Shown here in pieces: positions 3,079-55,930 of a DNA stretch of 64,000 nucleotides (the stretch's first letter is position 1; each line of letters starts with the position of its first letter). A program made the position numbers and the translations under genes. The notes under the pieces are model-generated. The model made no database searches, was not told the origin of the DNA, and was given only the letters and a program-made list of their open reading frames with translations. The stretch covers positions 248,001 to 312,000 of IMG/VR virus record IMGVR_UViG_3300024259_002152, one strand, 5' to 3'.

Positions 3079-3079
3079 A

Positions 3080-37800: not shown

Positions 37801-37897
37801 AAATTCCAGACAATGAGTTTTTCAGAATAGTAGCAGTAGAAAGTGTGTTTTTTGAACGATAAAGTGGTTTTTTGACAAGAAACGGAGATTTGCGATG
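37801..37897 (+). repeat. TTCCAGACAA element copy 1 (long ~95-bp form)
   Basis: Core at 37804; similarity to 53275-53370 runs to the ATG. Confidence 0.85.
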
Positions 37898-38197
37898 GAA
37901 GTTAGAATTGGTAGAAGAGTATATAATGTTGAGTTTCCTACCGAGGCCCAAAAGCCCAAATACGGGGCAAGGAAACGGACTATGGCCCTGGTAAAAACGC
38001 ATTGCGTAATCACAAGCAGCACAAACATGAGTATGGTTAGAGCATCAGCTAGCCAGAATTACCGCGACGAATTGAACTGGCAAACAGGTCGTAAATTTGC
38101 TCTGAAACGAGCTTTGGCCAAAGCAAGAATCAAAAAGGAATCCCGTACTGTTTTTTGGAATAGATTTAAGGAAGAATACCCTATTAAGGGTAAGTGA
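37895..38197 (+). CDS. hypothetical basic protein
   Basis: GRKFALKRAL; GGAG RBS. Confidence 0.75.
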   Translation: MEVRIGRRVYNVEFPTEAQKPKYGARKRTMALVKTHCVITSSTNMSMVRASASQNYRDELNWQTGRKFALKRALAKARIKKESRTVFWNRFKEEYPIKGK

Positions 38198-38224
38198 AGA
38201 ACATATAACAAATTAATATACAAC

Positions 38225-38256
38225 AAGGATGTAAGTGTTTAACTTGCATCCTTTTT
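38225..38256 (+). terminator. intrinsic terminator
   Basis: AAGGATGTAAGT...ACTTGCATCCTT + T run. Confidence 0.7.
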
Positions 38257-38280
38257 GTCCATAAAAAAAAGGGGGTTGAA

Positions 38281-39492
38281 ATGGAACATATGATGAAAGA
38301 GTTATTAAATATTGGAATAGAACATCCTGCTCGTGTAATGGAATTTACCGAGTTGACTCAAGGATTGTTCGCGGAAGTTGCTGATGGTAATGTAAGCGTT
38401 ACTTATCATCCAGAATTTCCACATCTTGCTCTGTTTAAATATACTCAAGATTGCGTTACGGAGAGAAAATGGAACAAATTTTCTCTTATGGCTAGAGGTC
38501 TAATATTAGATCTTCAAGATAAAAAAGTTGTTGCAGTTAGTTTTACAAAATTTTTCAACTACGGAGAAATTGAAGAAGGCTCTCGATCTATCATAGAGCC
38601 AGATTTTCTTGTTACAGAGAAAATGGACGGCTCATTAGGCATAATGTACTTTTTTGCTGATCAATTCAGGTTCGCGACAGCAGGTTCATTTATATCGGAA
38701 CAGGCTCAATGGGCAGATCAATGGGCAAAGGAGCATATAGCCATTGATAAATTAGATAAGACAAGCACTTATCTGTTTGAAATAATTTATCATGAGAATA
38801 AAATTGTGGTTCATTACAATTTTGAAGGACTGGTTTTATTAAGCATATTTAATTCTTATGGATTAGAGTGTAATTATGAGCAAATTAAGTGGGAAGCGTC
38901 ATATATGGGAACTCGGTATGTGAAGCAATATAACTTTGAAGATATGGAAACCATAGTCAATACTGCTAAAACTTTAGATAGCAATAATGAGGGTTATGTC
39001 ATACGCTTCAAAAGCGGAATACGTTTAAAAATTAAAGGCGATGAGTATGTCCGCGTGCATAGACTAATTTCTCAAGTCACACCTCTTGCTATATGGGAAT
39101 CTATGGTTAATGGTGACGACTTAGAAGGGATAAAAAAAGATTTGCCAGAAGAGATGGAAAAAGACTTTGATACTATAAGAGCAATTTTTAATGCAAAATT
39201 AGAAGCTTTTATAAAAGAGGTAGAAAGTCTTTGTGAGCGAACTAAATCTATGTCAGATAAGGAATTAGGCATATATATGCAACAGGGTCTTGTGGCATTC
39301 GGAAACACAGTTTTTAAAGATTCTTTTAAATTTATTTTCCATATGAGAAAGAATAAATTCTATGAATCTCTTAACGATGTGCCATCGTATGGTCGTAGAA
39401 GAATTTTTGCTGCATTTAGACCAAAAGCTAATATATTGGAAGGATATAAGCCTTCGTCAGTAGTTAATAGATTCGCCAATATGGACAACTAA
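38281..39492 (+). CDS. T4 Rnl1-like RNA ligase
   Basis: ARGLI, KFFN, TEKMDGS, FEII, EGYV, LKIK..EY. Confidence 0.9.
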   Translation: MEHMMKELLNIGIEHPARVMEFTELTQGLFAEVADGNVSVTYHPEFPHLALFKYTQDCVTERKWNKFSLMARGLILDLQDKKVVAVSFTKFFNYGEIEEGSRSIIEPDFLVTEKMDGSLGIMYFFADQFRFATAGSFISEQAQWADQWAKEHIAIDKLDKTSTYLFEIIYHENKIVVHYNFEGLVLLSIFNSYGLECNYEQIKWEASYMGTRYVKQYNFEDMETIVNTAKTLDSNNEGYVIRFKSGIRLKIKGDEYVRVHRLISQVTPLAIWESMVNGDDLEGIKKDLPEEMEKDFDTIRAIFNAKLEAFIKEVESLCERTKSMSDKELGIYMQQGLVAFGNTVFKDSFKFIFHMRKNKFYESLNDVPSYGRRRIFAAFRPKANILEGYKPSSVVNRFANMDN

Positions 39493-39545
39493 CTAAATCA
39501 CTTTCCAAAAAACTGATTTGTAAGTGAAAGTGATTTAGTTATAAT
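39490..39545 (+). promoter_or_regulatory. GTGAAA-class promoter embedded in 16-bp inverted repeat
   Basis: TAACTAAATCACTTTC / GAAAGTGATTTAGTTA; TTGTAA-N16-TATAAT. Confidence 0.65.
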
Positions 39546-39582
39546 TCACCTAGTAATATTAGTTGTTTATTTAGGTGTATTT

Positions 39583-40017
39583 ATGAAAAGTGAATATGGG
39601 TGCTATGTTTTAATGTTGTCGTATATTGATGAAAATTGGATGGATATAGGAGGTAATATTTATCCAACAGAAGGTTTTATAGTAGCTAAAAATTTTACGA
39701 GAGATATTGATGTCAGATTTGGATTGAATGGAATTCTATGGGGTAAAACTTGCTATTTTCCATATGAAAAAATAGATAAGGGACACTGGGCAGTAGTAAA
39801 AATAGAATTAACTGAAGATTTAATACAAACTGATTATCGTTATAATCGTTATAAATTTTCTAATGGATTTGTAGTTTATACTGGTAGTCTGAGGTTTGCT
39901 GCTGATTACATCCTTGAACATAAAAATGATTCTGATTTTGGAGAAGAAGGAGGATGGTTGCAGCCAGAAGAGATAGCAGGATCTCAACAATGGATGCAAG
40001 ACCATGCTCTTGTATAA
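39583..40017 (+). CDS. hypothetical protein
   Basis: ORF downstream of promoter. Confidence 0.7.
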   Translation: MKSEYGCYVLMLSYIDENWMDIGGNIYPTEGFIVAKNFTRDIDVRFGLNGILWGKTCYFPYEKIDKGHWAVVKIELTEDLIQTDYRYNRYKFSNGFVVYTGSLRFAADYILEHKNDSDFGEEGGWLQPEEIAGSQQWMQDHALV

Positions 40018-40058
40018 GAATAAGTTTAATATTTAATTAAGAAAAATAGGGAAGCATT

Positions 40059-40847: not shown

Positions 40848-41539
40848 TGCTGATTACTGTCATTGCAGATATGCATGGAAATTTGAAGTTTAAAGTTCCA
40901 GAAACGGATTTGCTTTTGATAGCGGGAGATATATGTCCAGCTTCTCATGATCGTTATATATCTATTGGTATGCAAAGAACATGGTTGGAAAACAAATTTA
41001 AAAAATGGATTTATGAACAACCTGTTGATCATGCTATTGCTATAGCTGGAAACCATTGTTGGATATGGGAATGTGCTGAAAGTGAAGTTCCTATATGGTT
41101 TCCTAAAAATTGTGTCGATAAAGAAATGGTGGAGGATAATAAGATTGAATATATAGAGGACTTTTTAGTTTTCTATAAGGATTTAAAAATATATGGGACT
41201 CCTGTTCAGCTTTCTTTTAATAATTGGGCTTTTAATCGGGAAGAAGAATCACTACAAAAGTATTGGGATAATATCCCTGAAGGACTAGATATACTTCTTC
41301 TACATAGTCCTCCATATGGAATATTAGACCAAACTCATCATCCTAAATATCCTTCTAAGCGTATAGGTAGTAAAAGTTTGTTAAAAAGAATAAAACAGGT
41401 TAAACCTAAACTGGTAGTTTTTGGTCATAATCATGGAGACCATGGGGTGGTTGAAGAAGATGGTATTAAGTATATTAATGCTTCTTTAATTGACGAGCAT
41501 TATAAAATGGTAAGAAAACCGATTGTTATAGAAATATAA
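40844..41539 (+). CDS. calcineurin-like metallophosphoesterase
   Basis: D.HG, AGD, GNH, HSPP, FGHNH. Confidence 0.9.
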   Translation: MMLITVIADMHGNLKFKVPETDLLLIAGDICPASHDRYISIGMQRTWLENKFKKWIYEQPVDHAIAIAGNHCWIWECAESEVPIWFPKNCVDKEMVEDNKIEYIEDFLVFYKDLKIYGTPVQLSFNNWAFNREEESLQKYWDNIPEGLDILLLHSPPYGILDQTHHPKYPSKRIGSKSLLKRIKQVKPKLVVFGHNHGDHGVVEEDGIKYINASLIDEHYKMVRKPIVIEI

Positions 41540-41620: not shown

Positions 41621-44401
41621 ATGAGAATAGCTGATATATACCAGACTGTAGCTGATAATATAAATAGCGCTCAGGATAGAGGTGGGGATATAGTGTCTTA
41701 TGTTGATCAGATGATGACAGACATTAATGATTCTGAGATACCTACTAATGACACAAACAAGAAAACACTAGAAAGTCAAATTAATGCGACTTCCCACCTT
41801 CTCATTTTAAAGAATAATACCTATACTGTTGAAGTGCTAAATTTTGTCCGAGAGTTACAAAAATATGTAACGGAAGAGTATGGTTCAATAAATACTTTTT
41901 TAAGAGATCATGGCATACTAGTGGGAGTTACTTTTGCTGATATATCTAAAACTGTAGGATATCCAATCGATGCAGATAATATCGTTGTAGATTATGGGTG
42001 CGATTTTTATGTGTCTAATAGTGGTAATGATTCAAATGATGGACGCACTGCGGCAACCGCATGGGCTACTCTTGATAAAGTTAGTAGCGTTCTTACTGAT
42101 GCTACATTGAGTGTGGATAATGCAATTAGTGCTGGTGATATTGTTGGTTTTCGTACAGATGATATTTTTGTTGGAACATTAGATACTTCTGAAGTTGACG
42201 GTAGTTCTGGAAATCCTATTACTTTTACTTCATATGGGACGGGAAATAAACCAGTAATTACTGGTAAGATTACTTTAGGAGATAATTGGGTTCATCATTC
42301 TGGTAATATTTGGAGATATGATGTTTCATCTTTGTCTGCCACTCATGTTAGATATTTATTGTTGGATGGTGTCGATCAAACAATGTCTCAATCAGAAGTG
42401 GGATATGCAGACAATGCGACATATAGTTCTTTCCAAGACTATAATTTAAGCTTTAATCCAAGCTTTAATCCTAGTGTAGATCCCGATTATAATCCTAGCG
42501 ATTATGACAGTATTTATGTGGGTGCTGAAGTATTGATGAGAACAACAATTTTTACATGGGATATACGAACTGTTACAGATTATGATCCTTATTCGGGGAC
42601 AATATGTTTTGCACCAACTGTAAGTTATATTCTGGGAACAACAGGATCTTCTAAGGGGGGTTATTTCTTTCAGAATTCTTTATATATTTTGGAACAAAAT
42701 GAGATTCAGGGGGAATGGGTAAATGAAGGTGATTATATTTATTATTATTCAATAACTGATCCTTATGATTTAGGAACCATTGAAGTAAGTTCAGTAGATA
42801 CTTTAATGGAAATTGAAAATTCAGAATATATAACTGTTAATAATCTAAAGTTTATGTATGCTAATGATTATGCCATATTAGGGGATGGAGCCAATTATAA
42901 AAATATAAATAATTGTCATTTTGAGCAATGTAACACTGGTATTTTTGAGGCAATCACAGGTTCATCAAATTCAATAATAGATAATAATATTTTTACAGAT
43001 ATGGGTAGCATTGCTATTCATCAACGTGATTCAGTTGATGTGACAATTACAAATAATACTATTACTAATATCGGTTTGACAATTGGCAGGATGGCTTATG
43101 TAGAAGATTCTAATACTTGGAATCCTAATATGTGGTATTCGGGTATACATTGTATAGATGCGTCAGGAGGATTGATTAAATATAATAATATTACAAATGT
43201 TGGTTATATAGGATTTAATTTCACCAGACCTACCGATCAAGTGCTTATACAATATAACTATATGAAAAATCCTTGTTTTTTACTCGTCGATGGTGGATCA
43301 TTTTATTCTTATAGTAATGCTCAACCTACTGTAACTTCAAATATTAATCAAATAACCTATAGAAATAATATTGCCGAGTATGATGATTATGATAATGTAG
43401 ATCGTTTGATTGGACTTGAAGGTTCTACTTATGAGGAAAGTTCTGCCGGAGTTGTTGGTCTATTTAAAGATGGATATCTAAGAGCTGCTAATTATTATGA
43501 TAATTTTGCATTTGGTTTTTTCTTTGCTATTAGAAGCAATGCTTCGATGTATTCTGTGTGGTCAGGAAATATTGGAGTAGATAAATATTACATTTCTGGA
43601 ACTGCTAGATCTTTTTATATGGCTGATGCGGCTTCAGTATTTTGGGTTAATAATATTTGTGAAAATAATGTTTTTGTTTCTAATTATGTAGGTAGTTCTA
43701 GAGTGGGTTTGGTATATGATGATCAATTAATTGCTGCTAGTGGCAATTCATTTGATTATAATAAGATGTTAAATCCATTTACTATACTTCCAGAACGTAT
43801 TTCTACTTTGCCAAGCTTCAACTATTTAACAATAGAAGAATGGAAAGCATATGATGCAGTAGGACCTCATGAAACTTCTAATGTATTTTTGTATTCTATA
43901 TCTGGACTATCTTCTGAGTCCGAATTTATCTGGTATGCTACTAATCCTACAAAATCAACAGTTAGTGTCAGTTTCCCTGCTGGCTATCGTTACTATACTG
44001 TTGATGGAGACGCAGTTACAAGTGATACCCTATCTTTATATGAAGGTAAGGTTTATTACAGGACTATAGATGAAGGAATGCCTCAGGCTAGTAGTGTTAC
44101 TATAAGTGAAAATATAAGCGCTAATCCTTCTAGCGGTGGAGTTTATGATGCTTCTTATGATTATAACCATGCCGAAGGGAATACTGAATCAGGTTCTACT
44201 TATCAGTGGTATCGTTCAATAGATGGGACTGTTGAAGCGAGAGTAACAATTTCAGGTGCGAATAGCTTATCATATGACACAACTAGTATGGATATCGATC
44301 AATATGTCTTATTTGGTGTGACACCAAAATCTGCTGCTGGAGCGGGAAGTTTAGTTACCGGAGTGGAAAGATTTAGCAATACCATGTCTGTAGTTTGGTA
44401 A
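41621..44401 (+). CDS. large protein with right-handed parallel beta-helix (pectin-lyase-like) repeats
   Basis: YVSNSGNDSNDG...AWATL.K, PITFTSYGTG.KP, repeated I.NN.I; C-terminal YQWYR Ig-like domain. Confidence 0.8.
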   Translation: MRIADIYQTVADNINSAQDRGGDIVSYVDQMMTDINDSEIPTNDTNKKTLESQINATSHLLILKNNTYTVEVLNFVRELQKYVTEEYGSINTFLRDHGILVGVTFADISKTVGYPIDADNIVVDYGCDFYVSNSGNDSNDGRTAATAWATLDKVSSVLTDATLSVDNAISAGDIVGFRTDDIFVGTLDTSEVDGSSGNPITFTSYGTGNKPVITGKITLGDNWVHHSGNIWRYDVSSLSATHVRYLLLDGVDQTMSQSEVGYADNATYSSFQDYNLSFNPSFNPSVDPDYNPSDYDSIYVGAEVLMRTTIFTWDIRTVTDYDPYSGTICFAPTVSYILGTTGSSKGGYFFQNSLYILEQNEIQGEWVNEGDYIYYYSITDPYDLGTIEVSSVDTLMEIENSEYITVNNLKFMYANDYAILGDGANYKNINNCHFEQCNTGIFEAITGSSNSIIDNNIFTDMGSIAIHQRDSVDVTITNNTITNIGLTIGRMAYVEDSNTWNPNMWYSGIHCIDASGGLIKYNNITNVGYIGFNFTRPTDQVLIQYNYMKNPCFLLVDGGSFYSYSNAQPTVTSNINQITYRNNIAEYDDYDNVDRLIGLEGSTYEESSAGVVGLFKDGYLRAANYYDNFAFGFFFAIRSNASMYSVWSGNIGVDKYYISGTARSFYMADAASVFWVNNICENNVFVSNYVGSSRVGLVYDDQLIAASGNSFDYNKMLNPFTILPERISTLPSFNYLTIEEWKAYDAVGPHETSNVFLYSISGLSSESEFIWYATNPTKSTVSVSFPAGYRYYTVDGDAVTSDTLSLYEGKVYYRTIDEGMPQASSVTISENISANPSSGGVYDASYDYNHAEGNTESGSTYQWYRSIDGTVEARVTISGANSLSYDTTSMDIDQYVLFGVTPKSAAGAGSLVTGVERFSNTMSVVW

Positions 44402-44438
44402 TTTGTATTTAAGAAAGCGTAAACTATCTATTAATATT

Positions 44439-44999: not shown

Positions 45000-45042
45000 A
45001 ATTCCAGACAATGAATTTTTCAAACATATAGGTAGAAATGTG
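44998..45042 (+). repeat. TTCCAGACAA element copy 2
   Basis: Core TTCCAGACAATG at 45002, right after stop codon. Confidence 0.8.
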
Positions 45043-47125: not shown

Positions 47126-48193
47126 ATGAAAATAGAAGATGTTGGTAATAGCTCTTTTAAATGTAAATTATTGTTAGGGAATGCTAAAAATGTTTTGCAA
47201 GATATCCCTGAAAATACTTTTCATATGGCAGTGACAAGTCCTCCTTATTGGGACCAAAGAGACTATAACGTAGATGGTCAATTAGGTCAAGAAAATAGCC
47301 CTGAAGAGTATGTAGAGAATTTAGTCGCTATCTGTAGAGAAGTAAGAAGAGTTATTAGGGAAGATGGCACTTTTTGGCTTAATATCGGAGACGGTTATTG
47401 TAAGAAAACTATTAAATCTTCAAATCTTAAACAAAAAGATTTAGTAGGTATACCGTGGATGGTTGCGTTTGCTCTTAGGCAAGATGGGTGGTATTTACGA
47501 AGTGATATTATTTGGAAAAAAACAAATCCTATGCCCGAGAGTGTAAGAACAAGACCTTCTAAATCTTATGAACATTTATTTCTTTTCTCCAAATCGGAAA
47601 ATTATTTCTATGATGCAGAAGCTATAGCAGAGCCACAGAAAGAGATTTCTGTTAAAAGAGCTTATTCTAAAAATAGAGTAGAAAAGAGAAAAGATTATCA
47701 AAATGATAATTATGCTATTAGTGGTAAGTCCCAAGATAAAACATATAGAAAGATGAGAAAAATATTAGACGAGATGGGAGAAGATGAGGTCATCACGTGT
47801 AATAAAAAAGATGTTTGGGAAATAGCTACTGCCGACAATAAGGTTAAACATTTTGCCATCTATCCAAGAGAATTAGTTAAGCCTTGCATTTTGGCAGGTA
47901 GTTCTTCGAAAGGTTGTTGTCCAAAATGCCAATCTCCATGGATTATGGAAAAGGGAAAAAATTGGGAACCAAGTTGTAATTGTGGAGAAACAGAAGTAAA
48001 AGAATGTATTGTTCTAGATCCTTTCAATGGGTCAGGAACTACAGGAATGATATGTAGAGAATATGGTAGAAAGTATGTAGGAATAGATATTAGTGAGGAA
48101 TATTTATCTTATGCAAGAGATGCTTTGATAGGAGAGAGGAGAGCAGAAATGGCAGAAGAAGTAGATTCTATTCAACAACTTAAAGTTTTGTAA
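47126..48193 (+). CDS. DNA N4/N6 methyltransferase, beta class (paralog of 12369-13511)
   Basis: TSPPYW, HFAIYP, DPFNGSGTT. Confidence 0.92.
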   Translation: MKIEDVGNSSFKCKLLLGNAKNVLQDIPENTFHMAVTSPPYWDQRDYNVDGQLGQENSPEEYVENLVAICREVRRVIREDGTFWLNIGDGYCKKTIKSSNLKQKDLVGIPWMVAFALRQDGWYLRSDIIWKKTNPMPESVRTRPSKSYEHLFLFSKSENYFYDAEAIAEPQKEISVKRAYSKNRVEKRKDYQNDNYAISGKSQDKTYRKMRKILDEMGEDEVITCNKKDVWEIATADNKVKHFAIYPRELVKPCILAGSSSKGCCPKCQSPWIMEKGKNWEPSCNCGETEVKECIVLDPFNGSGTTGMICREYGRKYVGIDISEEYLSYARDALIGERRAEMAEEVDSIQQLKVL

Positions 48194-48230: not shown

Positions 48231-48283
48231 AAAATTCCAGACAACGCTTTTCTTAAAATTATAGCATAGAAAGTGTGTTTTTG
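48231..48283 (+). repeat. TTCCAGACAA element copy 3
   Basis: AAAATTCCAGACAACGCTTTTCTTAAAATTATAGCATAGAAAGTGTGTTTT. Confidence 0.85.
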
Positions 48284-48312: not shown

Positions 48313-49002
48313 ATGGTAGTTAAATTGACTCATCCATTTTTGATGGAATGTATTGATCCTAAGGGTCTTTTAAGGAATAACCTTAAAAGCAAATCTATGA
48401 CATTCTCCATGTTTTCTGGCCGACTTAGAAAGCAAGCTACAAAGTATGCGACAGGTGGGGATGGTAAAGTAAACGAAGATAAAGAAAATAAATACAAAGG
48501 TAATGGGTTTGAGTTATTCTGTGAGATATTTGTAAGAATATTTGGTTTTGATATGCTGGTTTCAATAAATCCCGATTCTTATGAAATAGTTGCTGATGGT
48601 GATGATACAGGAGTTGATGGAATAGGAATAGGTAACAATGGAAAAATTCATACCTTACAAGCCAAGTTTTGTATCGGCACAGAAGAATTAACAGCTAATA
48701 GGCAACATCTTACAAATTTCACTTCTGCATCTATGCTTAGGTATAATGTTAATAAAGATGAAGTATGCAATCTTAATAGGCCTGGGATAAAAAGTAAAAT
48801 TAATATGACGATCATGCATACTGGTAAGGGTATTAATCATTATACTGAGAATGATATGCTTTGTGGGCTTATCAGAGAGATAGGTTTAAAGGATATCAAA
48901 AATAAAGTAGATGGTAATAATATTTTTTGGGAATGTTTTAGGAAATCATGGGACAAACATCTTACAGAACTTATGAAGAAAAAGAGAAATGATGAAAAAT
49001 AG
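48313..49002 (+). CDS. restriction endonuclease-like (PD-(D/E)xK / Mrr-type) protein
   Basis: G..FE.F, DTGVDGIG, LQAKF. Confidence 0.7.
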   Translation: MVVKLTHPFLMECIDPKGLLRNNLKSKSMTFSMFSGRLRKQATKYATGGDGKVNEDKENKYKGNGFELFCEIFVRIFGFDMLVSINPDSYEIVADGDDTGVDGIGIGNNGKIHTLQAKFCIGTEELTANRQHLTNFTSASMLRYNVNKDEVCNLNRPGIKSKINMTIMHTGKGINHYTENDMLCGLIREIGLKDIKNKVDGNNIFWECFRKSWDKHLTELMKKKRNDEK

Positions 49003-50743
49003 ATATTTGTATCCATATCAAGAATTGCTTATTGAAAAAAGTTTAGACCCATCTATGGAAAAAGGCAGAATAATATTACCTACTGCTTCTGGTAAGGGTG
49101 TTATTTGCAGAGATATCATACGCAGAATGATTATATCTTCTGAAAATAAACTCAATCAGTTTCTGGGGGCTATTTTCACTCCTCGTCTTCTTTTAAATAA
49201 ACAGTGGACAAATGATTGTAGGGAATATTTTGAAAAAATAGATAGACCTTATAATTTTGCTCTTGTTGGTTCTTTAGGATTTAATAAGGAAGAAGCGATA
49301 TCTATTGAAGAGGCGTTATATTTCATATCAGGAGTTGGGGTTGATGCTCCCTGTCATGCTAAAACAGCTAAAGATTTAAAAGAGTTTGTAGAAAGCAACA
49401 GGACAAAAGGTGTTAATACAATTGTAATTTCTACTTATCACTCTAATAGAATTGTTAGAGCCTCAGGACTGGTTTTTGATTGTGCTGTGTATGATGAAGC
49501 TCACTACCTGCCTGGCAGAGAGCCTCAGGCAGGAGCTACAAGAGCTATTGATGAATTGTTTGAAGCAACAGAAGTGTTAACAAAGAAAAAAATATTTACT
49601 ACTGCTACAGAAAAACTTGGAGATGATCTGTTTGATATTGAAGAGGATAATATAGAGTATAATGGCAGAGGTATGGAAAATGAAGATATTTATGGTGCTG
49701 AGATATTTGGATGGATAGATAAAAAAACAGGACGACATAGACGTGTTTCTCCAAGAGATTTAATTGAATTCGGCTCAATATTGGAACCTAGAGTTTATGT
49801 TATTACAGATAATGACATAGACAAATATGAGCTTGATAGTCTTAGCGATGTTCCTAAAATAACTCCTGATCAGCCTCTGGGGCAACGTCAGGCAGAAGAA
49901 GTAGCTAAGGTTACTTTTATATCTTTTGAGGGCCATAAAAAAGAACTTAAAAAAGAGTCTGATTTTCCTGAGAAAATTGGGGCTAAGATGATGGTTGTTT
50001 GTGATGGTTTTAAAGAACTCGAGGGAATTAGAAACTCAAAAGAACTGCAAAATTTTAGGAGTAAAAATCCTAAGGTGAAATTATATTTTATTAGTTCTGA
50101 TTCTGATGGAGGCATATATATTCATGGGCAAGAAAAACAAAATTACAGTAATAAATCTAAAAAAGATTTTTTAGATGCTCTGAATAATTTGAGTTCTGAA
50201 GAAGATGCTATAATTTACCATATTGATATCCTTACTTGCGGAATTGATGTCCCTTCATTAACAGGTGTTTTATTCTTTAAAGAATGCAAGTTAATAAAAT
50301 TGCTTCAAAATATAGGTAGGGGTTCAAGACTTCATATCGAAGATAGAATAAGATGGGAAAATGGAGAGATCGAACCTGGAGGAAAAGGGTATATTAAACC
50401 TAGTTTTCATGTTTTACTCCCAATACTCAAACAGGACACTGAAGATTTTGTTAATAAATTTGTCAAAATAATAAATAGAATGAGGGATAATTATGGTTTT
50501 AAGGCTTATGAATTCTTACATATTGGGGCCACCAAAGAGCCTGGTGGAAAAGTGCCTATTGAAATTGCTGGACTAAAAACTCCTTTAAGTCAACTGAAAG
50601 ATAAAGCTGGTAGAGTCTATTATGAGTGGATAGAAGATAAAAGGATTAAAAGAGAAGAAAGAAAAATACAGGAAGAGATAGATAATCTTAAAAGATGGGT
50701 AGAGAATGGAGAATGGGATAAAATTGCAGAATATAAGAAATAA
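48989..50743 (+). CDS. superfamily II helicase (Res/ISP-like)
   Basis: PTASGK, STYHS, DEAH, TAT, GIDVP, QNIGRGSR. Confidence 0.88.
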   Translation: MMKNRYLYPYQELLIEKSLDPSMEKGRIILPTASGKGVICRDIIRRMIISSENKLNQFLGAIFTPRLLLNKQWTNDCREYFEKIDRPYNFALVGSLGFNKEEAISIEEALYFISGVGVDAPCHAKTAKDLKEFVESNRTKGVNTIVISTYHSNRIVRASGLVFDCAVYDEAHYLPGREPQAGATRAIDELFEATEVLTKKKIFTTATEKLGDDLFDIEEDNIEYNGRGMENEDIYGAEIFGWIDKKTGRHRRVSPRDLIEFGSILEPRVYVITDNDIDKYELDSLSDVPKITPDQPLGQRQAEEVAKVTFISFEGHKKELKKESDFPEKIGAKMMVVCDGFKELEGIRNSKELQNFRSKNPKVKLYFISSDSDGGIYIHGQEKQNYSNKSKKDFLDALNNLSSEEDAIIYHIDILTCGIDVPSLTGVLFFKECKLIKLLQNIGRGSRLHIEDRIRWENGEIEPGGKGYIKPSFHVLLPILKQDTEDFVNKFVKIINRMRDNYGFKAYEFLHIGATKEPGGKVPIEIAGLKTPLSQLKDKAGRVYYEWIEDKRIKREERKIQEEIDNLKRWVENGEWDKIAEYKK

Positions 50744-50747
50744 CTCT

Positions 50748-50770
50748 TTCCAGGCGATGAGATTTTCAGT
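50748..50770 (+). repeat. TTCCAGACAA element copy 4 (degenerate)
   Basis: TTCCAGGCGATGAGATTTTCA just after stop. Confidence 0.5.
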
Positions 50771-50811
50771 TTAGTAAAGTGTAAATGATGTTATAAATAT
50801 AAGGAAGCAAG

Positions 50812-51999
50812 ATGGAGCTTACTGAAAAGTTAAAGAAAGAAGCTGTAAGGGGACTTATTAAAGAGATATGCAAAGAAGATGGCTCTATACAAAATGTCCA
50901 TACTCCTTATTCTCTTTGTGAAGATATAATAGAAAAGGCAGTTGATTATATTGAAGATTTAGAGAATAAAAGTATTCTTGTTATGTTTAACCTTGAATTT
51001 ATTGATAGTCTTATTGACTTGGGTATAGATCCTAAGAATATAACTTTTATGTCAGATTCAGAACAAAGAAGAGGTTTGGCAGAAAATTTTTATGAAGTTG
51101 AAGCTATTGAATTTAAATTATCAGATTTAAATGGAGATAATATAATGGGTAAACAATTCGACCATGTGATTGGTAATCCTCCTTATCATAAAAAAGGAAA
51201 TGAAAAAGACACAAAGACGCAAGCGATATGGCCATCATTTGTTGATTTGTCTTTACAGTATTGTAAGGATGATGGGCATTTGTGTTTTGTGCATCCATCA
51301 GGGTGGAGAGGAAATGGAATGTATAAAAAAATAGGTAGGTTGATGAAATCAAAGCAGATAGAATATTTAGAAATTCATGATGAAAAAGATGGGATGAAAG
51401 TATTCGATGCTGAGACAAGATATGATTGGTATGTTTTGCAAAATAAATATAATGAAGATGTTACCGAAATTAAAGACCAAATAGGGAAAATCTCTAAAAT
51501 AAATATAAGAGACATGGAGATAATTCCTAATTTTAACATTATAGATGTTCAGAATCTCATTGCTAAAGATGGGGAGGAAAAGGTTACCGTTCTGTCAGAT
51601 TCTACATATCATACTCAATCTGGTGTTAAAAAAGGGTTTATGAGCGAAACAGAAACAAAGACACATAAATATCCGTGTGTGTATGTGGTTAACTCTGTGG
51701 GAGAAATGCAATTATGGTATTCTTCTGTAAAAAAAGGACATTTTGGGACAACCAAGCTTATATTTTCTAATGGCAGAATATCTTCTGCTAATTATTTTGT
51801 AGATCAAAATGGAGAATACGGTTTGACTCAATTTTCTTATGGGATTATAGACAGTATCGAGAATTTGAGAGATATATATAAAGCAATGAGAACTAAAGAA
51901 TTTAAAAATTTAATGGAGGCATGTTCGATAGGAATGCTTACTATTAATAAAGATGTTTTAAAAACATTCCGTAAAGATTTTTGGAAGGAGTTTGTATAA
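50812..51999 (+). CDS. Eco57I-like N6-adenine methyltransferase domain + target recognition region
   Basis: FDHVIGNPPY, W..FV, GHLCFVHPSGW; no clear FxGxG motif. Confidence 0.8.
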   Translation: MELTEKLKKEAVRGLIKEICKEDGSIQNVHTPYSLCEDIIEKAVDYIEDLENKSILVMFNLEFIDSLIDLGIDPKNITFMSDSEQRRGLAENFYEVEAIEFKLSDLNGDNIMGKQFDHVIGNPPYHKKGNEKDTKTQAIWPSFVDLSLQYCKDDGHLCFVHPSGWRGNGMYKKIGRLMKSKQIEYLEIHDEKDGMKVFDAETRYDWYVLQNKYNEDVTEIKDQIGKISKINIRDMEIIPNFNIIDVQNLIAKDGEEKVTVLSDSTYHTQSGVKKGFMSETETKTHKYPCVYVVNSVGEMQLWYSSVKKGHFGTTKLIFSNGRISSANYFVDQNGEYGLTQFSYGIIDSIENLRDIYKAMRTKEFKNLMEACSIGMLTINKDVLKTFRKDFWKEFV

Positions 52000-52604
52000 T
52001 GGTGAAAGAAATAACAAATACAGAACAAGTTTTAAAGAATGAGGAAAGAAGAAAAAAAGAGCAGAAGCAAACCGCAGAAGTATTCACACCTGATTCATTA
52101 GTGAATGAAATGTTAGATAAATTGCCTGAGGAATCGTGGAAAGAGAGGAAAACTTTTATAGACCCTGCTTGTGGTAATGGTAATTTTTTAGTTCATATAT
52201 TAAATAGAAAATTAAAAAGAGGCCATGATTCAGTTGGAGCTTTAAAATCTATTTATGGGCTTGATATTGAACAGAGTAATATTTTTGAATGTAGATTAAG
52301 ACTTTTAAAAATTGTTAGTTTGCAAGAAGAACTAACTGAAGAACATCTTAAAGCAGTTACTATAAATATTAAATATTTAAATAGTAAAAAGTGGCCTAAT
52401 GGTTCTCTTGACTATGATATGGAATTTAGAAATAATGCTAATCTTCAAACTATTAAAGAATGGTTAGAAGATATTAAAAAAAATGGTCTCGATCATGTGG
52501 CTATACCTGATAATATTGAATACACTATCGCAACCCCAGCTTTGGAAAATGGGAAAATATCAAACAGGAATGTAGAAAGTATTGATATGTTTGGAGATGA
52601 TTAA
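51999..52604 (+). CDS. SAM-binding N6 methylase-like subunit
   Basis: EVFTP..LV.EML, DPACGNGNFL, IYGLDI; no NPPY. Confidence 0.8.
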   Translation: MVKEITNTEQVLKNEERRKKEQKQTAEVFTPDSLVNEMLDKLPEESWKERKTFIDPACGNGNFLVHILNRKLKRGHDSVGALKSIYGLDIEQSNIFECRLRLLKIVSLQEELTEEHLKAVTINIKYLNSKKWPNGSLDYDMEFRNNANLQTIKEWLEDIKKNGLDHVAIPDNIEYTIATPALENGKISNRNVESIDMFGDD

Positions 52605-52698
52605 AAATTCCAGACAACGCTTTTCTTAAAATAGTAGCATAGAAAGTGTGTTTTTCAACTAGAACAGTGTTTTTTAAAGAAACGAAGGCGCAAAAATG
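52604..52698 (+). repeat. TTCCAGACAA element copy 5 (long form)
   Basis: Core at 52608, abutting stop codon. Confidence 0.85.
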
Positions 52699-53016
52699 GC
52701 ATTAGAAGTTACAATTATTCCCATCAAATGGCAAAAATTAGATGACAATATCCCTACTCTTAACTGTCCTGTTTGTGGAAAAGAGTGGGAACAAGAAGGA
52801 GGATATCCAGTAACTCCTTGTGAGCATCTAAAGTTTCGTTATCTAGAGGGAATTAATGTTGAATACTTCGGAGACTGGGATCATAACAATTTTGATTTGG
52901 ATGAAGTTTTGAAGGGCAAAATAACTGATCAGATTAGTGTTATATATCTATTTGAAGGGACCTCTATGTCTTGCGGTCCCGTTTTTACGAGTATTTACTA
53001 TGGCGTAAAAGAGTAA
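52696..53016 (+). CDS. hypothetical protein (CPVC..PCEH)
   Basis: Putative Zn-binding residues. Confidence 0.7.
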   Translation: MALEVTIIPIKWQKLDDNIPTLNCPVCGKEWEQEGGYPVTPCEHLKFRYLEGINVEYFGDWDHNNFDLDEVLKGKITDQISVIYLFEGTSMSCGPVFTSIYYGVKE

Positions 53017-53025
53017 TATTTCGTA

Positions 53026-53062
53026 AAAATTCCAGACAACGCTTTTTTCAGGGTTGTAAGAT
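53026..53062 (+). repeat. TTCCAGACAA element copy 6 (short form)
   Basis: Core at 53030. Confidence 0.8.
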
Positions 53063-53275
53063 ATGAAAAAGTTAATTGAAGCATTACAAATATTGTTGAA
53101 ATATGGTAATCCTGCTTATCCTACTCATTGCGAACATGATGTATTGATTATTTGTGGAATAGAACCTAAGAATGTCTCTCAAGAAGATATTGAGAAATTG
53201 GGTGAATTAGGATTTATTATTAGTAAAGAATACGGGACCGAGTCTTTCAGTTCATTTCGATATGGATCTGCATAA
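53063..53275 (+). CDS. hypothetical phage protein
   Basis: LIEALQI.LKY, PTHCEHD. Confidence 0.75.
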   Translation: MKKLIEALQILLKYGNPAYPTHCEHDVLIICGIEPKNVSQEDIEKLGELGFIISKEYGTESFSSFRYGSA

Positions 53276-53370
53276 AATTCCAGACAACGCTTTTCTCAGA
53301 ATTATAGCATAGAAAGTGTGTTTTTTTAACAATAGAGTGGTTTTTAACAAGAAACGGAGATGTAGCGATG
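53274..53370 (+). repeat. TTCCAGACAA element copy 7 (long form)
   Basis: Core at 53278, abutting stop codon. Confidence 0.85.
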
Positions 53371-53823
53371 AACGATGCAAAAAAGAAGTCGATTTTGGAC
53401 AAGTATGAGAGTTGGGAAAGTGTTCCTGCCGCTATTAAGGCATGGATTACTACGGATGCCATAAAAGAGGGTAAAAACCCTGTTATGGTTCGGGCTGGCT
53501 ACAAAGCAGCATTCAAGAGAATCCAGAACAATACCACTTTTACCATCGTGAGAGAAGATGGTGGGTATCTGGGCGGCTGTGTGAGTTCGATTCCTCTTCA
53601 TCATGTCATTAAGGCAAGAAGTGAACAGATGCTCACGGACAAGATTGGAAGAATCTATGAGGACATCCTGGAAGGTAGTAATAAGGATTCCAAGGGATAT
53701 TGGAAGGCAATGTCTTTGAAAAAAGAGAATATTACTTCTCTAGTCGAAGATTTAGAAGCTATTACTGTTGATGGTGTCGAACTCCAAATCATCAGCGATC
53801 CTGAGCATGTAGAGATCCTCTAA
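53368..53823 (+). CDS. hypothetical protein
   Basis: GGAG RBS; higher GC. Confidence 0.75.
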   Translation: MNDAKKKSILDKYESWESVPAAIKAWITTDAIKEGKNPVMVRAGYKAAFKRIQNNTTFTIVREDGGYLGGCVSSIPLHHVIKARSEQMLTDKIGRIYEDILEGSNKDSKGYWKAMSLKKENITSLVEDLEAITVDGVELQIISDPEHVEIL

Positions 53824-53890
53824 CGTATAAGAGAATATGGATCAGCGTCTTAAACAACTATAAAAATAAAGTAGACGCTACCCTAGATCA

Positions 53891-53921
53891 AAGGCACAAG
53901 CTAATAACTTGTGCCTTTTTT
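53891..53921 (+). terminator. intrinsic terminator
   Basis: AAGGCACAAG...CTTGTGCCTT + T run, directly before repeat copy 8. Confidence 0.8.
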
Positions 53922-53926
53922 CATTT

Positions 53927-53960
53927 TTCCAGACAACGCTTTTCTCAAAGTTGTATAATA
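53927..53960 (+). repeat. TTCCAGACAA element copy 8
   Basis: CAGACA-N18-TATAAT. Confidence 0.8.
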
Positions 53961-53989
53961 AATGTGCTAATAAAGGTTGATAGAAAAGT

Positions 53990-54241
53990 ATGGAACAAAG
54001 TTATTTTTTAAGTAAATTAAAGACTCATATAGATAGAACGGCCAATGCTCATGACCCTCAAATCACCGCCAATGCTATTTATTTTATAACTAAACAATAT
54101 CCTGTAAGTGTAATCAGCAAAGAAGCTTACAGAGAAACCCTTAAGAAGATAAGAACTCATTTAGTAGAGAATTTTGGGTGGAAGATGACTGAGGTTCATA
54201 GATGTGTTTGTATCCTACATAGATTGATGAAAATATTTTAA
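53990..54241 (+). CDS. hypothetical protein
   Basis: ORF after repeat. Confidence 0.65.
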   Translation: MEQSYFLSKLKTHIDRTANAHDPQITANAIYFITKQYPVSVISKEAYRETLKKIRTHLVENFGWKMTEVHRCVCILHRLMKIF

Positions 54242-54250
54242 AAAAACATC

Positions 54251-54279
54251 TTGACATGAAAGTGGAAGAAGGGTAAAAT
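54251..54279 (+). promoter_or_regulatory. sigma70 promoter
   Basis: TTGACA-N17-TAAAAT with TGAAAGTG in spacer. Confidence 0.65.
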
Positions 54280-54286
54280 AGACATT

Positions 54287-54523
54287 ATGACATGGAAATC
54301 TATAAAAGGTGTAAAACCCCCTTCTTTGAAAAGAGTATGGATATCCTATTATATAGATGGGATTTTAACTAAACAATATCAAACTTATGCTAAAGCTGTA
54401 GGAAAAGATCCTCATGGAGATATTTTTTGGCATGATTTTATGACTGGCAAAGTTCTTGATAATAGTAGAATTACAGTGTCTCATTGGATGGCAATTCCTG
54501 ATAATCCAATTCTTAATTTATGA
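54287..54523 (+). CDS. DUF551-like phage protein
   Basis: W.SI...P ... VSHWMAIP..P. Confidence 0.65.
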   Translation: MTWKSIKGVKPPSLKRVWISYYIDGILTKQYQTYAKAVGKDPHGDIFWHDFMTGKVLDNSRITVSHWMAIPDNPILNL

Positions 54524-54570
54524 TGATTAGTAGTCGTAACTCACAATATTTTTTTGAAAGGTTTGGTATC

Positions 54571-55854
54571 ATGGCGAAGAGTAGTAAATCACGTAGGAAA
54601 AAAGGCGGGTCTGCCCCTGTAACTCCTAGGCAGACAATTGTTCACGAAATCTCTCAAGCAACTAATGAGACAATCGTTCCCGAAAAAATGAGAACCCCAA
54701 AAATCTCTCATTTTTTTATCGATGTCGTGAAGAAAGTTCAAAAAGGGGTGGCTTATTATTCGGGGGATATGAGTTTGGCTGAGTTAGCAGCTTTGACTCA
54801 TGTGGATAATTACGATGGGGAGTGTGCGGATGTGGCAGGTAAGGGTCAAAGAGCATTGTGCGAAACGAGAGGTAAGCAATTTATGAATTTTATTGCTGAC
54901 CGAGACAATCTATGTTTTATGGAGATCCTTCTTAATGAACGTGAAAAAGAGATAACATTCACGTCTCTAAAACAAATGGGAATTTCTGTTCCTCAATATG
55001 ACAAATTGTCAGCTATGCATGGGGTTCTTGAGATTCCTATTTCTGTTAGATTGTATGTCTATGATGGGCAAACAAGACGGTTTGGTTATTTAAGTTTGCT
55101 TCATTTTGATCTAGACATGTTGGGAACAGATGCTTATAAGAGTTTTAAACATATGAGAGTTCCTTTCTGTTTATGTCAGGTATCTGCTGGTCAAGAAACA
55201 ACTTTGTTTCTTCATCACAATAAGCAAACTTCAGTGCCTAATGATCATAAGGCAATGGTTTCTTGGCATGCAAATAAATCATCAAGTCAGGTAAAGACTG
55301 ATAGTTATTCCGAGAAAACACGTTCCGTCATTGCTGGTATGACATTCATGATGGATAGAGATAGAACTAATCCATGGTATGGAAGAATTGGTATGCCCGA
55401 TCTTCCTAAGGAAGAAAATAAGCTACGCTTGGGAACACAGGGCAGCTTTAATACAGGACTGAAACGTTTTGTTGGATGGTTGAATAACCAATATTGGAGT
55501 CCTGAAACTTCTTACGAGGAAAAGAGTCAGGACTTGAAAGAAATATGCACCGTATTCTGGAGATCAGTGCAAAAAGTTTGCCCCAAGATATGGAGAACTC
55601 CTGAAGATTATATTCAGTTAAAATCTTTTGGAATTGCAACTTTAAGTTTGCTGATGCATACTCTGTATATCGATTTTTTCGATAGAGATATCGAATGGAC
55701 TATTGATAACATTCATAAGCATTTGAAGAAGAGTAAAATTATTACAACTCCTAAAATGTGGGAATGTGGCGGAGAACTCTCCAAAAGGGGAGGTAATTAC
55801 AAATCTCTTCAATCTCTTGAGCGGGATATATATGACCAGATCAGAAGGAATTAG
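54571..55854 (+). CDS. DGQHR-domain (DndB/ParB-like) protein
   Basis: GQRAL...R, YDGQTR, E..LF...N. Confidence 0.75.
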   Translation: MAKSSKSRRKKGGSAPVTPRQTIVHEISQATNETIVPEKMRTPKISHFFIDVVKKVQKGVAYYSGDMSLAELAALTHVDNYDGECADVAGKGQRALCETRGKQFMNFIADRDNLCFMEILLNEREKEITFTSLKQMGISVPQYDKLSAMHGVLEIPISVRLYVYDGQTRRFGYLSLLHFDLDMLGTDAYKSFKHMRVPFCLCQVSAGQETTLFLHHNKQTSVPNDHKAMVSWHANKSSSQVKTDSYSEKTRSVIAGMTFMMDRDRTNPWYGRIGMPDLPKEENKLRLGTQGSFNTGLKRFVGWLNNQYWSPETSYEEKSQDLKEICTVFWRSVQKVCPKIWRTPEDYIQLKSFGIATLSLLMHTLYIDFFDRDIEWTIDNIHKHLKKSKIITTPKMWECGGELSKRGGNYKSLQSLERDIYDQIRRN

Positions 55855-55861
55855 AAGCTAC

Positions 55862-55895
55862 GGGGAGTGGTTAATATCCACTCCCCTTCTTTTTT
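55862..55895 (+). terminator. intrinsic terminator
   Basis: GGGGAGTGG-TTAATAT-CCACTCCCC + T run, directly before repeat copy 9. Confidence 0.8.
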
Positions 55896-55930
55896 CCAGA
55901 CAATGAGTTTCTCAAAATGGTGATATATAA
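55894..55930 (+). repeat. TTCCAGACAA element copy 9
   Basis: TTCCAGACAATGAGTTTCTCAAAAT. Confidence 0.8.

What the first reader, a model, noticed from the sequence alone, without database searches (positions are those of the whole stretch)
37801..55930. Nine-copy intergenic TTCCAGACAA(C/T)G element marking gene-cassette boundaries
Seen: cores at 37804, 45002, 48235, 50748 (degenerate), 52608, 53030, 53278, 53927 and 55894, all co-oriented, mostly within about 15 nt of a stop codon or directly after a terminator, and found only in the right half. Consensus AAAATTCCAGACAACGCTTTTCTyAAAATwrTAGCATAGAAAGTGTGTTTT. Three copies (37801, 52604, 53274) extend to about 95 bp through the RBS to the ATG. 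CAGACA-N18-TA.... reads as a promoter (TATAAT in copy 8). They bracket variable-looking cargo such as the RM cassette and single small genes. Inference: an early-promoter/leader module that doubles as a homology arm for cassette shuffling, analogous to T4-type PeSL elements.
Basis: partly seen in the sequence, partly recalled or inferred. Interest (0 to 1): 0.75.

Follow-up and report, generated by a model that had tools for sequence, protein, structure and literature searches.

The report
Phage-specific promoter box in a marine megaphage
The repeated TTCCAGACAA element is real and is best read as the upstream box of a phage-specific promoter class that switches on a long block of accessory genes in an uncultured marine giant phage; the idea that it also drives gene-cassette shuffling has only weak support.

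Summary
There are 8 exact copies of TTCCAGACAAYG plus one 2-mismatch copy in the window, all on the + strand and all intergenic (0.37 expected by chance). The window lies in a 350,866-bp IMG/VR viral contig. Genome-wide there are 19 exact and about 6 near copies, all on the + strand, all in the last 65 kb, each 33-190 nt upstream of a start codon. The architecture is box (10 bp), 17 bp with a T- or A-tract, TAnnnT, then a purine. It is conserved in collinear relatives: about 55 sites in a 298-kb contig and about 33 in a complete 548-kb genome. Other lineages keep the architecture at orthologous positions but use different boxes. Twenty ORFs start with ATG directly after the TAnnnT and have no Shine-Dalgarno sequence. 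This implies leaderless mRNAs and a start site abutting the hexamer, which is not canonical sigma-70 geometry. The box also forms conserved inverted-repeat operators around a sigma-70-type promoter upstream of a conserved 239-aa gene. Best reading: a factor-dependent phage promoter regulon. PeSL membership fails, because there is no sigma-70 -35 element and no integral stem-loop. Shuffling evidence is suggestive only. No transcript data could be found.

The parts
37804..37836 (+). Box copy 1 (TTCCAGACAA, N17, TAGCAG). It sits 14 nt after a stop codon. Its leader runs to ATG 37895.
   Evidence: The box is present at the orthologous position in G001 (197430) and L160 (1165).
45002..45034 (+). 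Box copy 2, 3 nt after a stop codon, upstream of the 136-aa gene (ATG 45070).
   Evidence: Orthologous boxes in G001 (205279) and L160 (7267).
48235..48267 (+). Box copy 3 (hexamer TAGCAT), after the N6/N4 methylase gene. It heads the RM-like cassette.
   Evidence: Orthologous box in L160 (11073), followed there by unrelated cargo.
50748..50780 (+). Variant box copy 4 (TTCCAGGCGA, N17, TAAAGT), upstream of the Eco57I-like methylase gene (ATG 50812).
   Evidence: It is the only box of this type in the genome. The same box type is the standard one in lineages L246 and L247.
52608..52640 (+). Box copy 5 (TAGCAT), 4 nt after a stop codon, with the extended leader to ATG 52696.
53030..53062 (+). 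Box copy 6 (TAAGAT). It is followed directly by ATG 53063 of a 70-aa ORF with no Shine-Dalgarno sequence (leaderless type).
53278..53310 (+). Box copy 7 (TAGCAT), with the extended leader to ATG 53368.
   Evidence: Orthologous box in G001 (221547).
53927..53959 (+). Box copy 8 (TATAAT), directly behind a terminator hairpin.
   Evidence: Orthologous box in G001 (222886).
55894..55926 (+). Box copy 9 (TGATAT, or TATATA two nt later), directly behind a terminator hairpin.
   Evidence: Orthologous box in G001 (224619).
37837..37894 (+). Shared 5' leader after copy 1 (GAAAGTGTGTTTTTT...AGTGGTTTTT...AACGGAG). Paralogous leaders lie at 52641-52695 and 53311-53367.
   Evidence: (family D8). The leaders alone are 74-88% alike within the genome and 64-68% alike to their positional orthologues. 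No significant RNA structure was found.
53890..53918 (+). Intrinsic terminator abutting copy 8.
   Evidence: z = -2.98
55862..55886 (+). Intrinsic terminator abutting copy 9.
   Evidence: z = -4.52
48313..52604 (+). RM-like cargo between copies 3 and 5: a 229-aa protein, a ResIII helicase, an Eco57I-type methylase and a 201-aa protein.
   Evidence: for Pfam families. Absent from G001, G004, L160, L164 and L167. Present as a unit in another lineage with a different box.
53063..53275 (+). Leaderless 70-aa ORF driven by copy 6.
39518..39545 (+). Second promoter class inside the span (class A: TTGTAAGTGAAAGT...TATAAT), shown for contrast. Another lies at 56853-56881.
   Evidence: (D6, D15)

Best explanation
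The element is the upstream box of a phage-specific promoter class. A 10-bp box (TTCCAGACAA here) is followed by 17 bp containing a T- or A-tract, then a TAnnnT hexamer and a purine. It directs rightward transcription of some 25 or more units in one contiguous accessory-gene block of an uncultured marine giant phage. That block holds small unknown genes, DNA methylases, an RM-like cassette, an RNA ligase and tRNA genes. I infer that the box is read by a fast-evolving phage-encoded DNA-binding specificity factor working with the host RNA polymerase, not by the host sigma factor alone. I also infer that transcription starts at or within a few nucleotides of the base right after the hexamer, so that many genes are made as leaderless mRNAs. 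The same box, as inverted repeats, forms operators on both sides of a canonical sigma-70-type promoter in front of a conserved 239-aa gene. This suggests a switch in which an early product shuts its own promoter and turns on the box regulon. Shown: the sequence architecture, its distribution, its conservation, the lineage-specific box types and the ATG placement. Inferred: promoter activity, the start site, the timing and the identity of the factor.
For: (1) Counts and placement. There are 8 exact copies in the window against 0.37 expected. Genome-wide there are 19 exact and about 6 near copies, all on the + strand and all within 285.8-349.6 kb. All are intergenic and lie 33-190 nt upstream of a + strand ATG. 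Together with a second motif, it is the most enriched intergenic word.
(2) Geometry. TAnnnT starts at offset 27 in 13 of 19 (G000), 38 of 47 (G001) and 26 of 30 (G004) sites, with a purine at offset 33.
(3) Conservation. Collinear relatives at 30-86% protein identity have about 55 sites (G001, 197-284 kb) and about 33 sites (G004, complete at 548 kb, 155-227 kb), all on the gene strand.
(4) Lineage-specific boxes at orthologous positions with the same architecture: AACCAGTCGC, TACCAGAGAA, ATCCAGACAG, TTCCAGGTAA, TTCCAGGCGT and CTGAAGCGAA. The canonical TTGxAAAGTGA...TAnnAT class stays the same across lineages.
(5) Leaderless ORFs. Twenty ORFs in three genomes start with ATG exactly at offset 33, with no Shine-Dalgarno sequence and no alternative start. 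One is a radical-SAM enzyme whose CxxxCxxC motif lies at residues 15-22. More such cases occur in L243 and L247. In G004 some Shine-Dalgarno sequences begin 4-5 nt after the hexamer.
(6) Operator arrangement. Inverted and direct half-sites lie 28 bp apart, and two such units lie 92 bp apart around a TTGCAA-N17-TAnnAT promoter. This holds in at least 10 lineages, each using its own box type.
(7) Polymerase and factor searches. No phage RNA polymerase, MotA or AsiA homologue was detected. Three sigma-like ORFs exist. The 239-aa protein is a conserved core gene whose confident model gives only weak matches, all to winged-helix DNA-binding domains.
Against: There is no transcript evidence. No RNA run could be listed, so promoter activity and the start site rest on sequence logic alone. 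The box-N17/18-TAnnnT layout, often with TG before the hexamer, also fits an ordinary sigma-70-family promoter with an odd -35 element. That reading conflicts with the leaderless ATG placement, and I cannot resolve the conflict. The factor is not identified. The fold matches of the 239-aa protein are below significance (Foldseek E > 0.9; VIA Z at most 5.1). Its putative recognition helix does not map simply onto box type. The complex prediction was not run by the tool. The phage contig is only about 73% complete, so a polymerase or factor gene could be missing from it. However, the complete relative G004 also shows none.
Confidence: 0.72

Rival explanations
1. PeSL-like mobile regulatory cassette. 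The repeats are primarily, or also, substrates for homologous recombination that inserts, deletes and swaps gene cassettes.
For: Cargo next to conserved boxes differs between relatives. The RM-like cassette at 48313-52604 and the 106-aa and 70-aa genes are unique to this genome, and unrelated cargo follows the orthologous box in L160. Promoter-leader copies 37804 and 53278 are 87% alike but only 73% like their positional orthologues, which points to concerted evolution. Copy 50748 carries a box type otherwise found only in other lineages. Contigs from two other samples join 53921, through a foreign-type box, to 50758 (table 5c). In G004, box junctions are enriched for cassette edges (OR 2.9-3.6, p = 0.003-0.02).
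Against: In this genome, box junctions are not enriched for synteny edges (OR 0.96, p = 1 against G001; OR 1.17 against G004). Two of the four large indel sites in the span have no box: the 926-aa beta-helix gene and the stretch at 46-47 kb. The available relatives are too diverged (30-86% protein identity) to resolve events. The joints seen in reads have only 23-28 nt on one side and fall in repeats, so they are unreliable. The foreign box at 50748 shows a cassette arriving with its own promoter, not a swap between resident repeats. The shared core is only 12 bp in most copies, which is short for homologous recombination.
Confidence: 0.25
2. Ordinary host sigma-70/sigma-A early promoters with a degenerate -35 (CAGACA), 18 bp of spacer and a TAnnnT -10, needing no phage factor.
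For: The spacing and the TAnnnT hexamer fit. A TG is often present before the hexamer in this genome. Copy 8 scores as CAGACA-18-TATAAT.
Against: The sigma-70 scan finds 1 of 9 copies and shows no overall enrichment. The conserved part is a 10-12-mer lacking TTG. The box differs between lineages that presumably infect similar hosts, while the canonical class A promoters do not. ATG directly after the hexamer in 20 or more genes is incompatible with a start site 6-8 nt downstream of a -10 element. The box also occurs as inverted-repeat operators.
Confidence: 0.1
3. Promoters of a phage-encoded sigma factor. One of the three sigma-like ORFs would read the box as its -35 element and TAnnnT as its -10.
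For: Sigma-like ORFs lie at window 18813-19364 (regions 2 and 4), window 19905-20621 (region 4) and genome 225484-226203. The first is preceded by a class A promoter. The two-block layout with a 17-bp spacer resembles a sigma-type promoter.
Against: The same start-site problem applies as for host sigma. The symmetric inverted-repeat operators conserved in at least 10 lineages suggest a free DNA-binding protein rather than a sigma subunit. The box also sits upstream of complete sigma-70-type promoters in some sites.
Confidence: 0.2
4. DNA sites for a replication or partition protein (iterons), or an RNA-level signal (processing or translation site), rather than promoters.
For: The 239-aa gene with the box-rich upstream region is followed by a DnaB/RecA-like ATPase. 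Its weak fold matches include Orc1/Cdc6 winged-helix domains. The ATG abutting the hexamer could in principle mark an RNA cleavage site.
Against: Dozens of single, oriented boxes lie at a fixed distance from a hexamer and from start codons, only on the gene strand and only between genes. That pattern fits transcription signals. There is no conserved RNA structure.
Confidence: 0.06

Closest known systems
T4-type PeSL elements (promoter-early stem-loops; Arbiol et al. 2010, PMC2839356; Comeau et al. 2014, PMC4122927)
   Same: Both are short repeated regulatory modules lying between a stop codon and the next Shine-Dalgarno/ATG. Both are concentrated in a plastic region rich in small unknown genes, co-oriented with the genes, and sometimes joined to a terminator. 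There are hints of exchange between copies.
   Different: PeSLs match the host sigma-70 consensus and contain an integral stem-loop. Here the -35 region is a phage-specific box. Only about 10% of copies have an adjacent hairpin. Neither box-bounded indels nor mini-circles could be shown.
T4 middle promoters (MotA box at -30 plus TAnnnT, with MotA/AsiA sigma appropriation); from general knowledge
   Same: A phage-specific upstream box replaces the -35 element and is combined with a TAnnnT element. It drives a defined regulon, and the activator is presumably made from an early host-type promoter.
   Different: The box sequence is different. The spacing to the hexamer is 17 bp rather than 11-13 bp. 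The inferred start site abuts the hexamer. No MotA (MotCF) or AsiA homologue was found. The box also serves as an inverted-repeat operator.
phi29 p4 early-to-late switch; from general knowledge
   Same: A small phage DNA-binding protein would bind repeats around early promoters to repress them and would activate promoters lacking a -35 element.
   Different: There is no sequence or detected fold relation. Here the regulon has 25-55 promoters rather than one, and nothing has been shown experimentally.
SPO1 host-takeover module / T5 pre-early region (dense promoter clusters at one genome end); from general knowledge
   Same: A dense array of short transcription units with near-identical promoters, confined to one end-proximal block of small accessory genes.
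   Different: Those use canonical host sigma promoters. Here the box is non-canonical and lineage-specific.

Membership tests
PeSL (T4-type promoter-early stem-loop) | Promoter identical or close to the host sigma-70 consensus (-35 TTGACA, -10 TATAAT, AT-rich upstream) | tested here: not met
   The consensus scan finds only copy 8 (CAGACA-18-TATAAT) and shows no enrichment over shuffles. The conserved block is TTCCAGACAA with no TTG.
PeSL (T4-type promoter-early stem-loop) | Integral stem-loop acting as terminator or attenuator within or overlapping the promoter | tested here: not met
   Seven of 9 copies show no significant structure (z from -1.0 to +1.6). Two have a separate upstream terminator. 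Terminator-like hairpins precede 2 of 19, 3 of 47 and 4 of 30 sites in the three genomes.
PeSL (T4-type promoter-early stem-loop) | Intergenic position, from the stop codon of one gene to the Shine-Dalgarno/ATG of the next, concentrated in hyperplastic regions upstream of ORFans | tested here: met
   all copies are intergenic. The block is rich in genes without orthologues in the relatives.
PeSL (T4-type promoter-early stem-loop) | Indels or replacements between close relatives that end in the elements | tested here: inconclusive
   OR 0.96 (p = 1) for this genome and OR up to 3.6 (p = 0.003) for G004. The relatives are too diverged. Individual cases point both ways.
PeSL (T4-type promoter-early stem-loop) | Mini-circles or deletions formed by recombination between neighbouring elements | tested here: inconclusive
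   Joints 53944/53946/53957 to 55891/55894 were seen in contigs of three runs. However, they have only 23-28 nt on one side and lie within the repeat itself. This is not reliable.
T4 MotA-dependent middle promoters | MotA box (a/t)(a/t)(a/t)TGCTTtA centred near -30 | tested here: not met
   The box here is TTCCAGACAA. The MotA consensus is quoted from general knowledge.
T4 MotA-dependent middle promoters | MotA and AsiA proteins encoded by the phage | tested here: not met
   No MotCF (PF09158) or AsiA (PF09010) match was found in G000, G001 or the complete G004. A distant analogue is not excluded.
Canonical sigma-70-family promoter | Start site 6-8 nt downstream of the -10 hexamer | tested here: not met
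   This rests on inference only. Twenty ORFs have ATG immediately after the hexamer and no Shine-Dalgarno sequence. No transcript data were available.
Promoter (any class) | Primary transcript 5' ends at the sites | not testable with these tools
   No RNA run could be listed for this sequence.

The most novel reading that the evidence does not exclude
The box is the recognition site of a rapidly diversifying phage-encoded transcription factor. The candidate is the conserved 239-aa protein, which gives only weak winged-helix-like fold matches. The factor would loop and shut its own sigma-70-type early promoter through inverted-repeat operators. It would also activate a regulon of 25-55 promoters that initiate directly 3' of a TAnnnT element, producing many leaderless mRNAs. 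That initiation geometry has not been described for bacterial RNA polymerase. Co-occurring marine megaphage lineages carry at least seven box specificities. This may insulate their regulons from each other, and accessory cassettes may move between lineages together with, or at, these boxes.
Probability: 0.25. Interest if true: 0.75.

Novelty: new variant of a known kind. Interest (0 to 1): 0.5.

Why it matters
Transcription programmes of uncultured giant phages (350-550 kb) are essentially unknown. This element gives a sequence-level map of one regulon. It covers where the units start, which genes belong together, and the fact that many are leaderless. It also gives a concrete candidate switch region. 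The lineage-specific box types supply a natural covariation data set for finding the specificity factor. They also provide a marker for tracing which accessory cassettes were imported from other lineages, such as methylases and RM-like genes. If the start-site geometry is confirmed, it would point to an unusual way of redirecting the host polymerase. If it is not confirmed, the finding reduces to an ordinary, though new, phage promoter consensus.

Tried and rejected
- Near and distant DNA searches of the phage collection found no relative.
- An exact-pattern scan of IMG/VR for the box gave only single chance hits.
- RNA runs: none was listed, so no start-site mapping was possible.
- Reads and contigs from four seawater runs were laid on 50700-56699. 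Coverage was 3-7x and fragmentary. Joints fell inside the repeats with short sides, so they are not usable as evidence of deletions or circles.
- The junction sequence from that call was not found in IMG/VR.
- Phage RNA polymerase: no Pfam match for Rpb2_6, Rpb1_2 or the T7-type enzyme. For the T7-type model nothing matched in the control genomes either, so that one search is uninformative. No DxDGD motif was found in a plausible ORF. The giant ORFs are adhesin-like.
It counts as no evidence.
- A simple one-residue code between the putative recognition helix of the 239-aa protein and the box type does not hold. Lys goes with ACAA, GTAA and AAGA, and Asp goes with GCGT and TCGC. This is a lead only.
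- The leaders have no Rfam family and no significant fold, so an RNA-element reading was dropped.
- A mobile-element (MITE-like) reading was dropped, because there are no terminal inverted repeats or target duplications and the strand and gene-start coupling is strict.

Full report
**Observation.** The pattern TTCCAGACAAYG occurs exactly eight times in the window, at 37804, 45002, 48235, 52608, 53030, 53278, 53927 and 55894. All eight are on the + strand, against 0.37 expected from shuffles. The ninth, 'degenerate' copy at 50748 reads TTCCAGGCGATG and has the same downstream layout. All nine are intergenic. They lie 3-42 nt after a stop codon, or directly after strong terminator hairpins at 53890-53918 and 55862-55886. 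They lie 33-169 nt before the next + strand ATG. Three copies (37804, 52608, 53278) share 80-87% identity over about 95 nt, up to the start codon. The proteins they precede are not detectably related.

**Context.** The window is bases 248,001-312,000 of a 350,866-bp IMG/VR viral contig. The contig has 33% G+C and about 92% of its ORFs are on one strand. CheckV estimates about 73% completeness. It was assembled from seawater and is present in many seawater runs. Genome-wide the box occurs 19 times exactly, plus about 6 near copies. Every one is on the + strand and every one lies between 285,804 and 349,559, the last 65 kb. The contig ends inside this block. The collinear relative G001 continues for a further 27 kb, and the first 14 kb of that stretch still carry boxes. 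Among intergenic words the box is one of two outstanding families. The other family (class A) is TTGAAAGTGAAAGT-N8/9-TATAAT. This is a canonical -35/-10 pair at 17-bp spacing, with about 30 sites spread over the rest of the genome.

**Architecture and conservation.**
- Aligning all copies gives box (offsets 0-9), 17 bp holding a T- or A-tract at offsets 14-19, TAnnnT at offsets 27-32, and a purine at offset 33.
- Protein searches found collinear relatives. G001 is 297,710 bp and G004 is 547,943 bp and rated complete. Shorter contigs were also found.
- G001 has about 55 sites between 197 and 284 kb. G004 has about 33 between 155 and 227 kb. All are on the gene strand and have the same architecture.
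- Several window copies have boxes at orthologous positions in G001 and in L160.
- Other relatives with the same gene order carry a different box at those positions: AACCAGTCGC in L164 and TACCAGAGAA in L167.
- Further lineages use ATCCAGACAG, TTCCAGGTAA, TTCCAGGCGT or CTGAAGCGAA. All are followed by the same tract-plus-hexamer layout.
- The class A promoter sequence does not change between these lineages.
- A signal that diversifies by lineage next to one that stays constant argues that the box is read by a phage-encoded factor and class A by conserved host machinery.

**Start site.**
- In 20 cases across three genomes an ORF of 48-283 aa begins with ATG exactly at offset 33, the base after the hexamer. 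One of these is in the window, at 53063-53275.
- These ORFs have no Shine-Dalgarno sequence and no alternative start. They include signal-peptide-like N-termini and a radical-SAM protein whose cluster motif lies at residues 15-22.
- More examples occur in other lineages.
- Other offsets are almost empty.
- In G004 several Shine-Dalgarno sequences begin only 4-5 nt after the hexamer.
- All other genes of these phages use strong GGAG-type sites, so the 20 ORFs are best explained as leaderless mRNAs. Transcription must therefore start at or just before offset 33.
- That places the TAnnnT at about -6 to -1, not at -12 to -7. The element is therefore not a canonical sigma-70-type promoter, despite its -35/-10-like spacing.
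- I could not test this. No RNA run was listed.
- No phage RNA polymerase was detected in G000, G001 or the complete G004. Host polymerase redirected by phage proteins is the default assumption. Three sigma-like ORFs exist. No MotA or AsiA homologue was found.

**A switch region.**
- Outside the window, at genome 324,066-324,201, the box occurs twice inverted and twice direct. These copies surround a TTGCAA-N17-TAAAAT promoter upstream of a 239-aa gene.
- The same arrangement is found in G001, G004 and nine further lineages. Inverted and direct half-sites lie 28 bp apart, and two units lie 92 bp apart, one on each side of the promoter. Each lineage uses its own box type.
- The symmetry argues for a free DNA-binding protein rather than a sigma subunit. 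It suggests repression of an early promoter by the same factor that activates the box promoters.
- The 239-aa protein is a conserved core gene with more than 200 homologues and no Pfam family.
- Its model is confident (pLDDT 87). Fold matches are weak but consistently winged-helix DNA-binding domains: Foldseek E > 0.9 and VIA Z at most 5.1.
- It is a candidate for the factor and no more than that. Its putative recognition helix varies between lineages without a simple code, and the complex prediction was not run.

**Cassette shuffling.**

Points in favour:
- The RM-like cassette at 48313-52604 and the 106-aa and 70-aa genes between copies are absent from every relative examined.
- The orthologous box in L160 is followed by 9 kb of unrelated genes.
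- Promoter-leader copies within this genome are more alike than positional orthologues, 87% against 73%.
- Copy 50748 is the only box of the TTCCAGGCG type in this genome. It matches the standard box of lineages L246 and L247. The methylase sub-cassette therefore probably arrived with its own promoter.
- A similar RM-like cassette exists in a lineage with yet another box.
- Contigs from two other samples join 53921, through a foreign-type box, to 50758.

Points against:
- Box-bearing junctions in this genome are no more often cassette edges than box-free ones. The odds ratios are 0.96 and 1.17. They reach 2.9-3.6 only when G004 is the reference.
- Two of the four large replacement sites in the span lack a box.
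- The relatives are far too diverged for a PeSL-type analysis.
- The read joints are unreliable.

The shuffling idea remains possible as a side effect but is not demonstrated.

**Comparison with known systems.**
- PeSLs are defined by a sigma-70 consensus promoter, an integral stem-loop and indels bounded by the elements (PMC2839356). Here the first two features are not met and the third is inconclusive.
- Functionally the element is closest to activator-dependent phage promoter classes such as T4 middle promoters, and to phi29-type early/late switches. It shares neither sequence nor detectable protein homology with them.
- No paper in the searchable library mentions the box in a phage context.

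**Verdict.** This is a real, extensive and conserved phage promoter-type signal. It is ordinary in kind. It is new in its consensus, in its lineage-specific diversification, in its operator use and in its inferred leaderless start geometry.

Noticed in passing
window 1472-1503, 9110-9139, 18752-18783, 20962-20990, 24873-24904, 33550 region, 39516-39547, 56853-56897: A second promoter family: TTGAAAGTGAAAGT-N8/9-TATAAT. It is a canonical -35/-10 pair with a conserved AAGTGAAAGT spacer. About 30 sites occur genome-wide, and the sequence is invariant across lineages that differ in the other box.
   Followed up: partly
window 18813-19364 and 19905-20621 (also genome 225484-226203): Three phage ORFs with weak to moderate sigma-70 region 2 and/or region 4 matches. 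The first lies just downstream of a class A promoter, with a NUDIX hydrolase gene between the two window copies.
   Followed up: partly
L146:11850-12250 (genome 323,850-324,250, outside the window): A 400-bp intergenic region holding two inverted/direct box pairs that flank a sigma-70-type promoter, plus a GTTCCACGTGGAAC palindrome. It lies upstream of a conserved operon: the 239-aa protein, a 188-aa protein with a weak zinc-ribbon match, and a DnaB/RecA-like ATPase. It could also be a replication origin.
   Followed up: partly
window 35387-37114 and 38281-39492: A Ro60/TROVE plus vWA protein and a T4 Rnl1-type RNA ligase lie side by side and are conserved at 58-84% identity in all relatives. 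This looks like an RNA repair or quality-control module in a phage.
   Followed up: no
window 12433-13415 vs 47181-48106: Two paralogous N6/N4 DNA methylase genes lie 34.7 kb apart, with DNA segments 75-91% identical.
   Followed up: no
window 41621-44401: A 926-aa right-handed beta-helix protein (depolymerase or tail-spike-like) is unique to this genome. It replaces shorter unrelated cargo in the relatives, and there is no box on its left side.
   Followed up: partly
window 54520-55854: A DndB-like (DNA-sulfur-modification-associated) protein conserved in G001 and G004. It is bracketed by box copies 8 and 9.
   Followed up: no
genome 245,585-245,613 and 246,248-246,271 (about 2 kb left of the window): Two neighbouring genes share a 5' leader made of tandem TAGTT(T) pentamer repeats followed by AAGGAGTTACAAATG.
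   Followed up: no
genome 37,800-92,427 (outside the window): A run of giant ORFs of 1,000-2,221 aa with Laminin_G_3, fn3 and Kelch/beta-propeller domains. They are probably fibre or adhesin proteins. A 3,047-aa relative lies next to the RM-like cassette in another lineage (L257).
   Followed up: partly
window 2730-2773, 3040-3083, 6644-6687, 6949-6992 and 58747-58836 / 59204-59293: Small families of paralogous gene ends and starts: repeated ...TTTGAGATTTTGGATTTATAAAATGA 3' ends, and two tandem genes with 78% identical 5' parts.
   Followed up: no
L246:2490-2500 and L247:3790-3800 regions (upstream of their 239-aa genes): Lineages whose own box is TTCCAGGCGT also carry one inverted TTTCCAGACAA, this window's box type, about 211-214 nt upstream of the 239-aa gene. 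This hints that more than one box specificity may act at the switch region.
   Followed up: no
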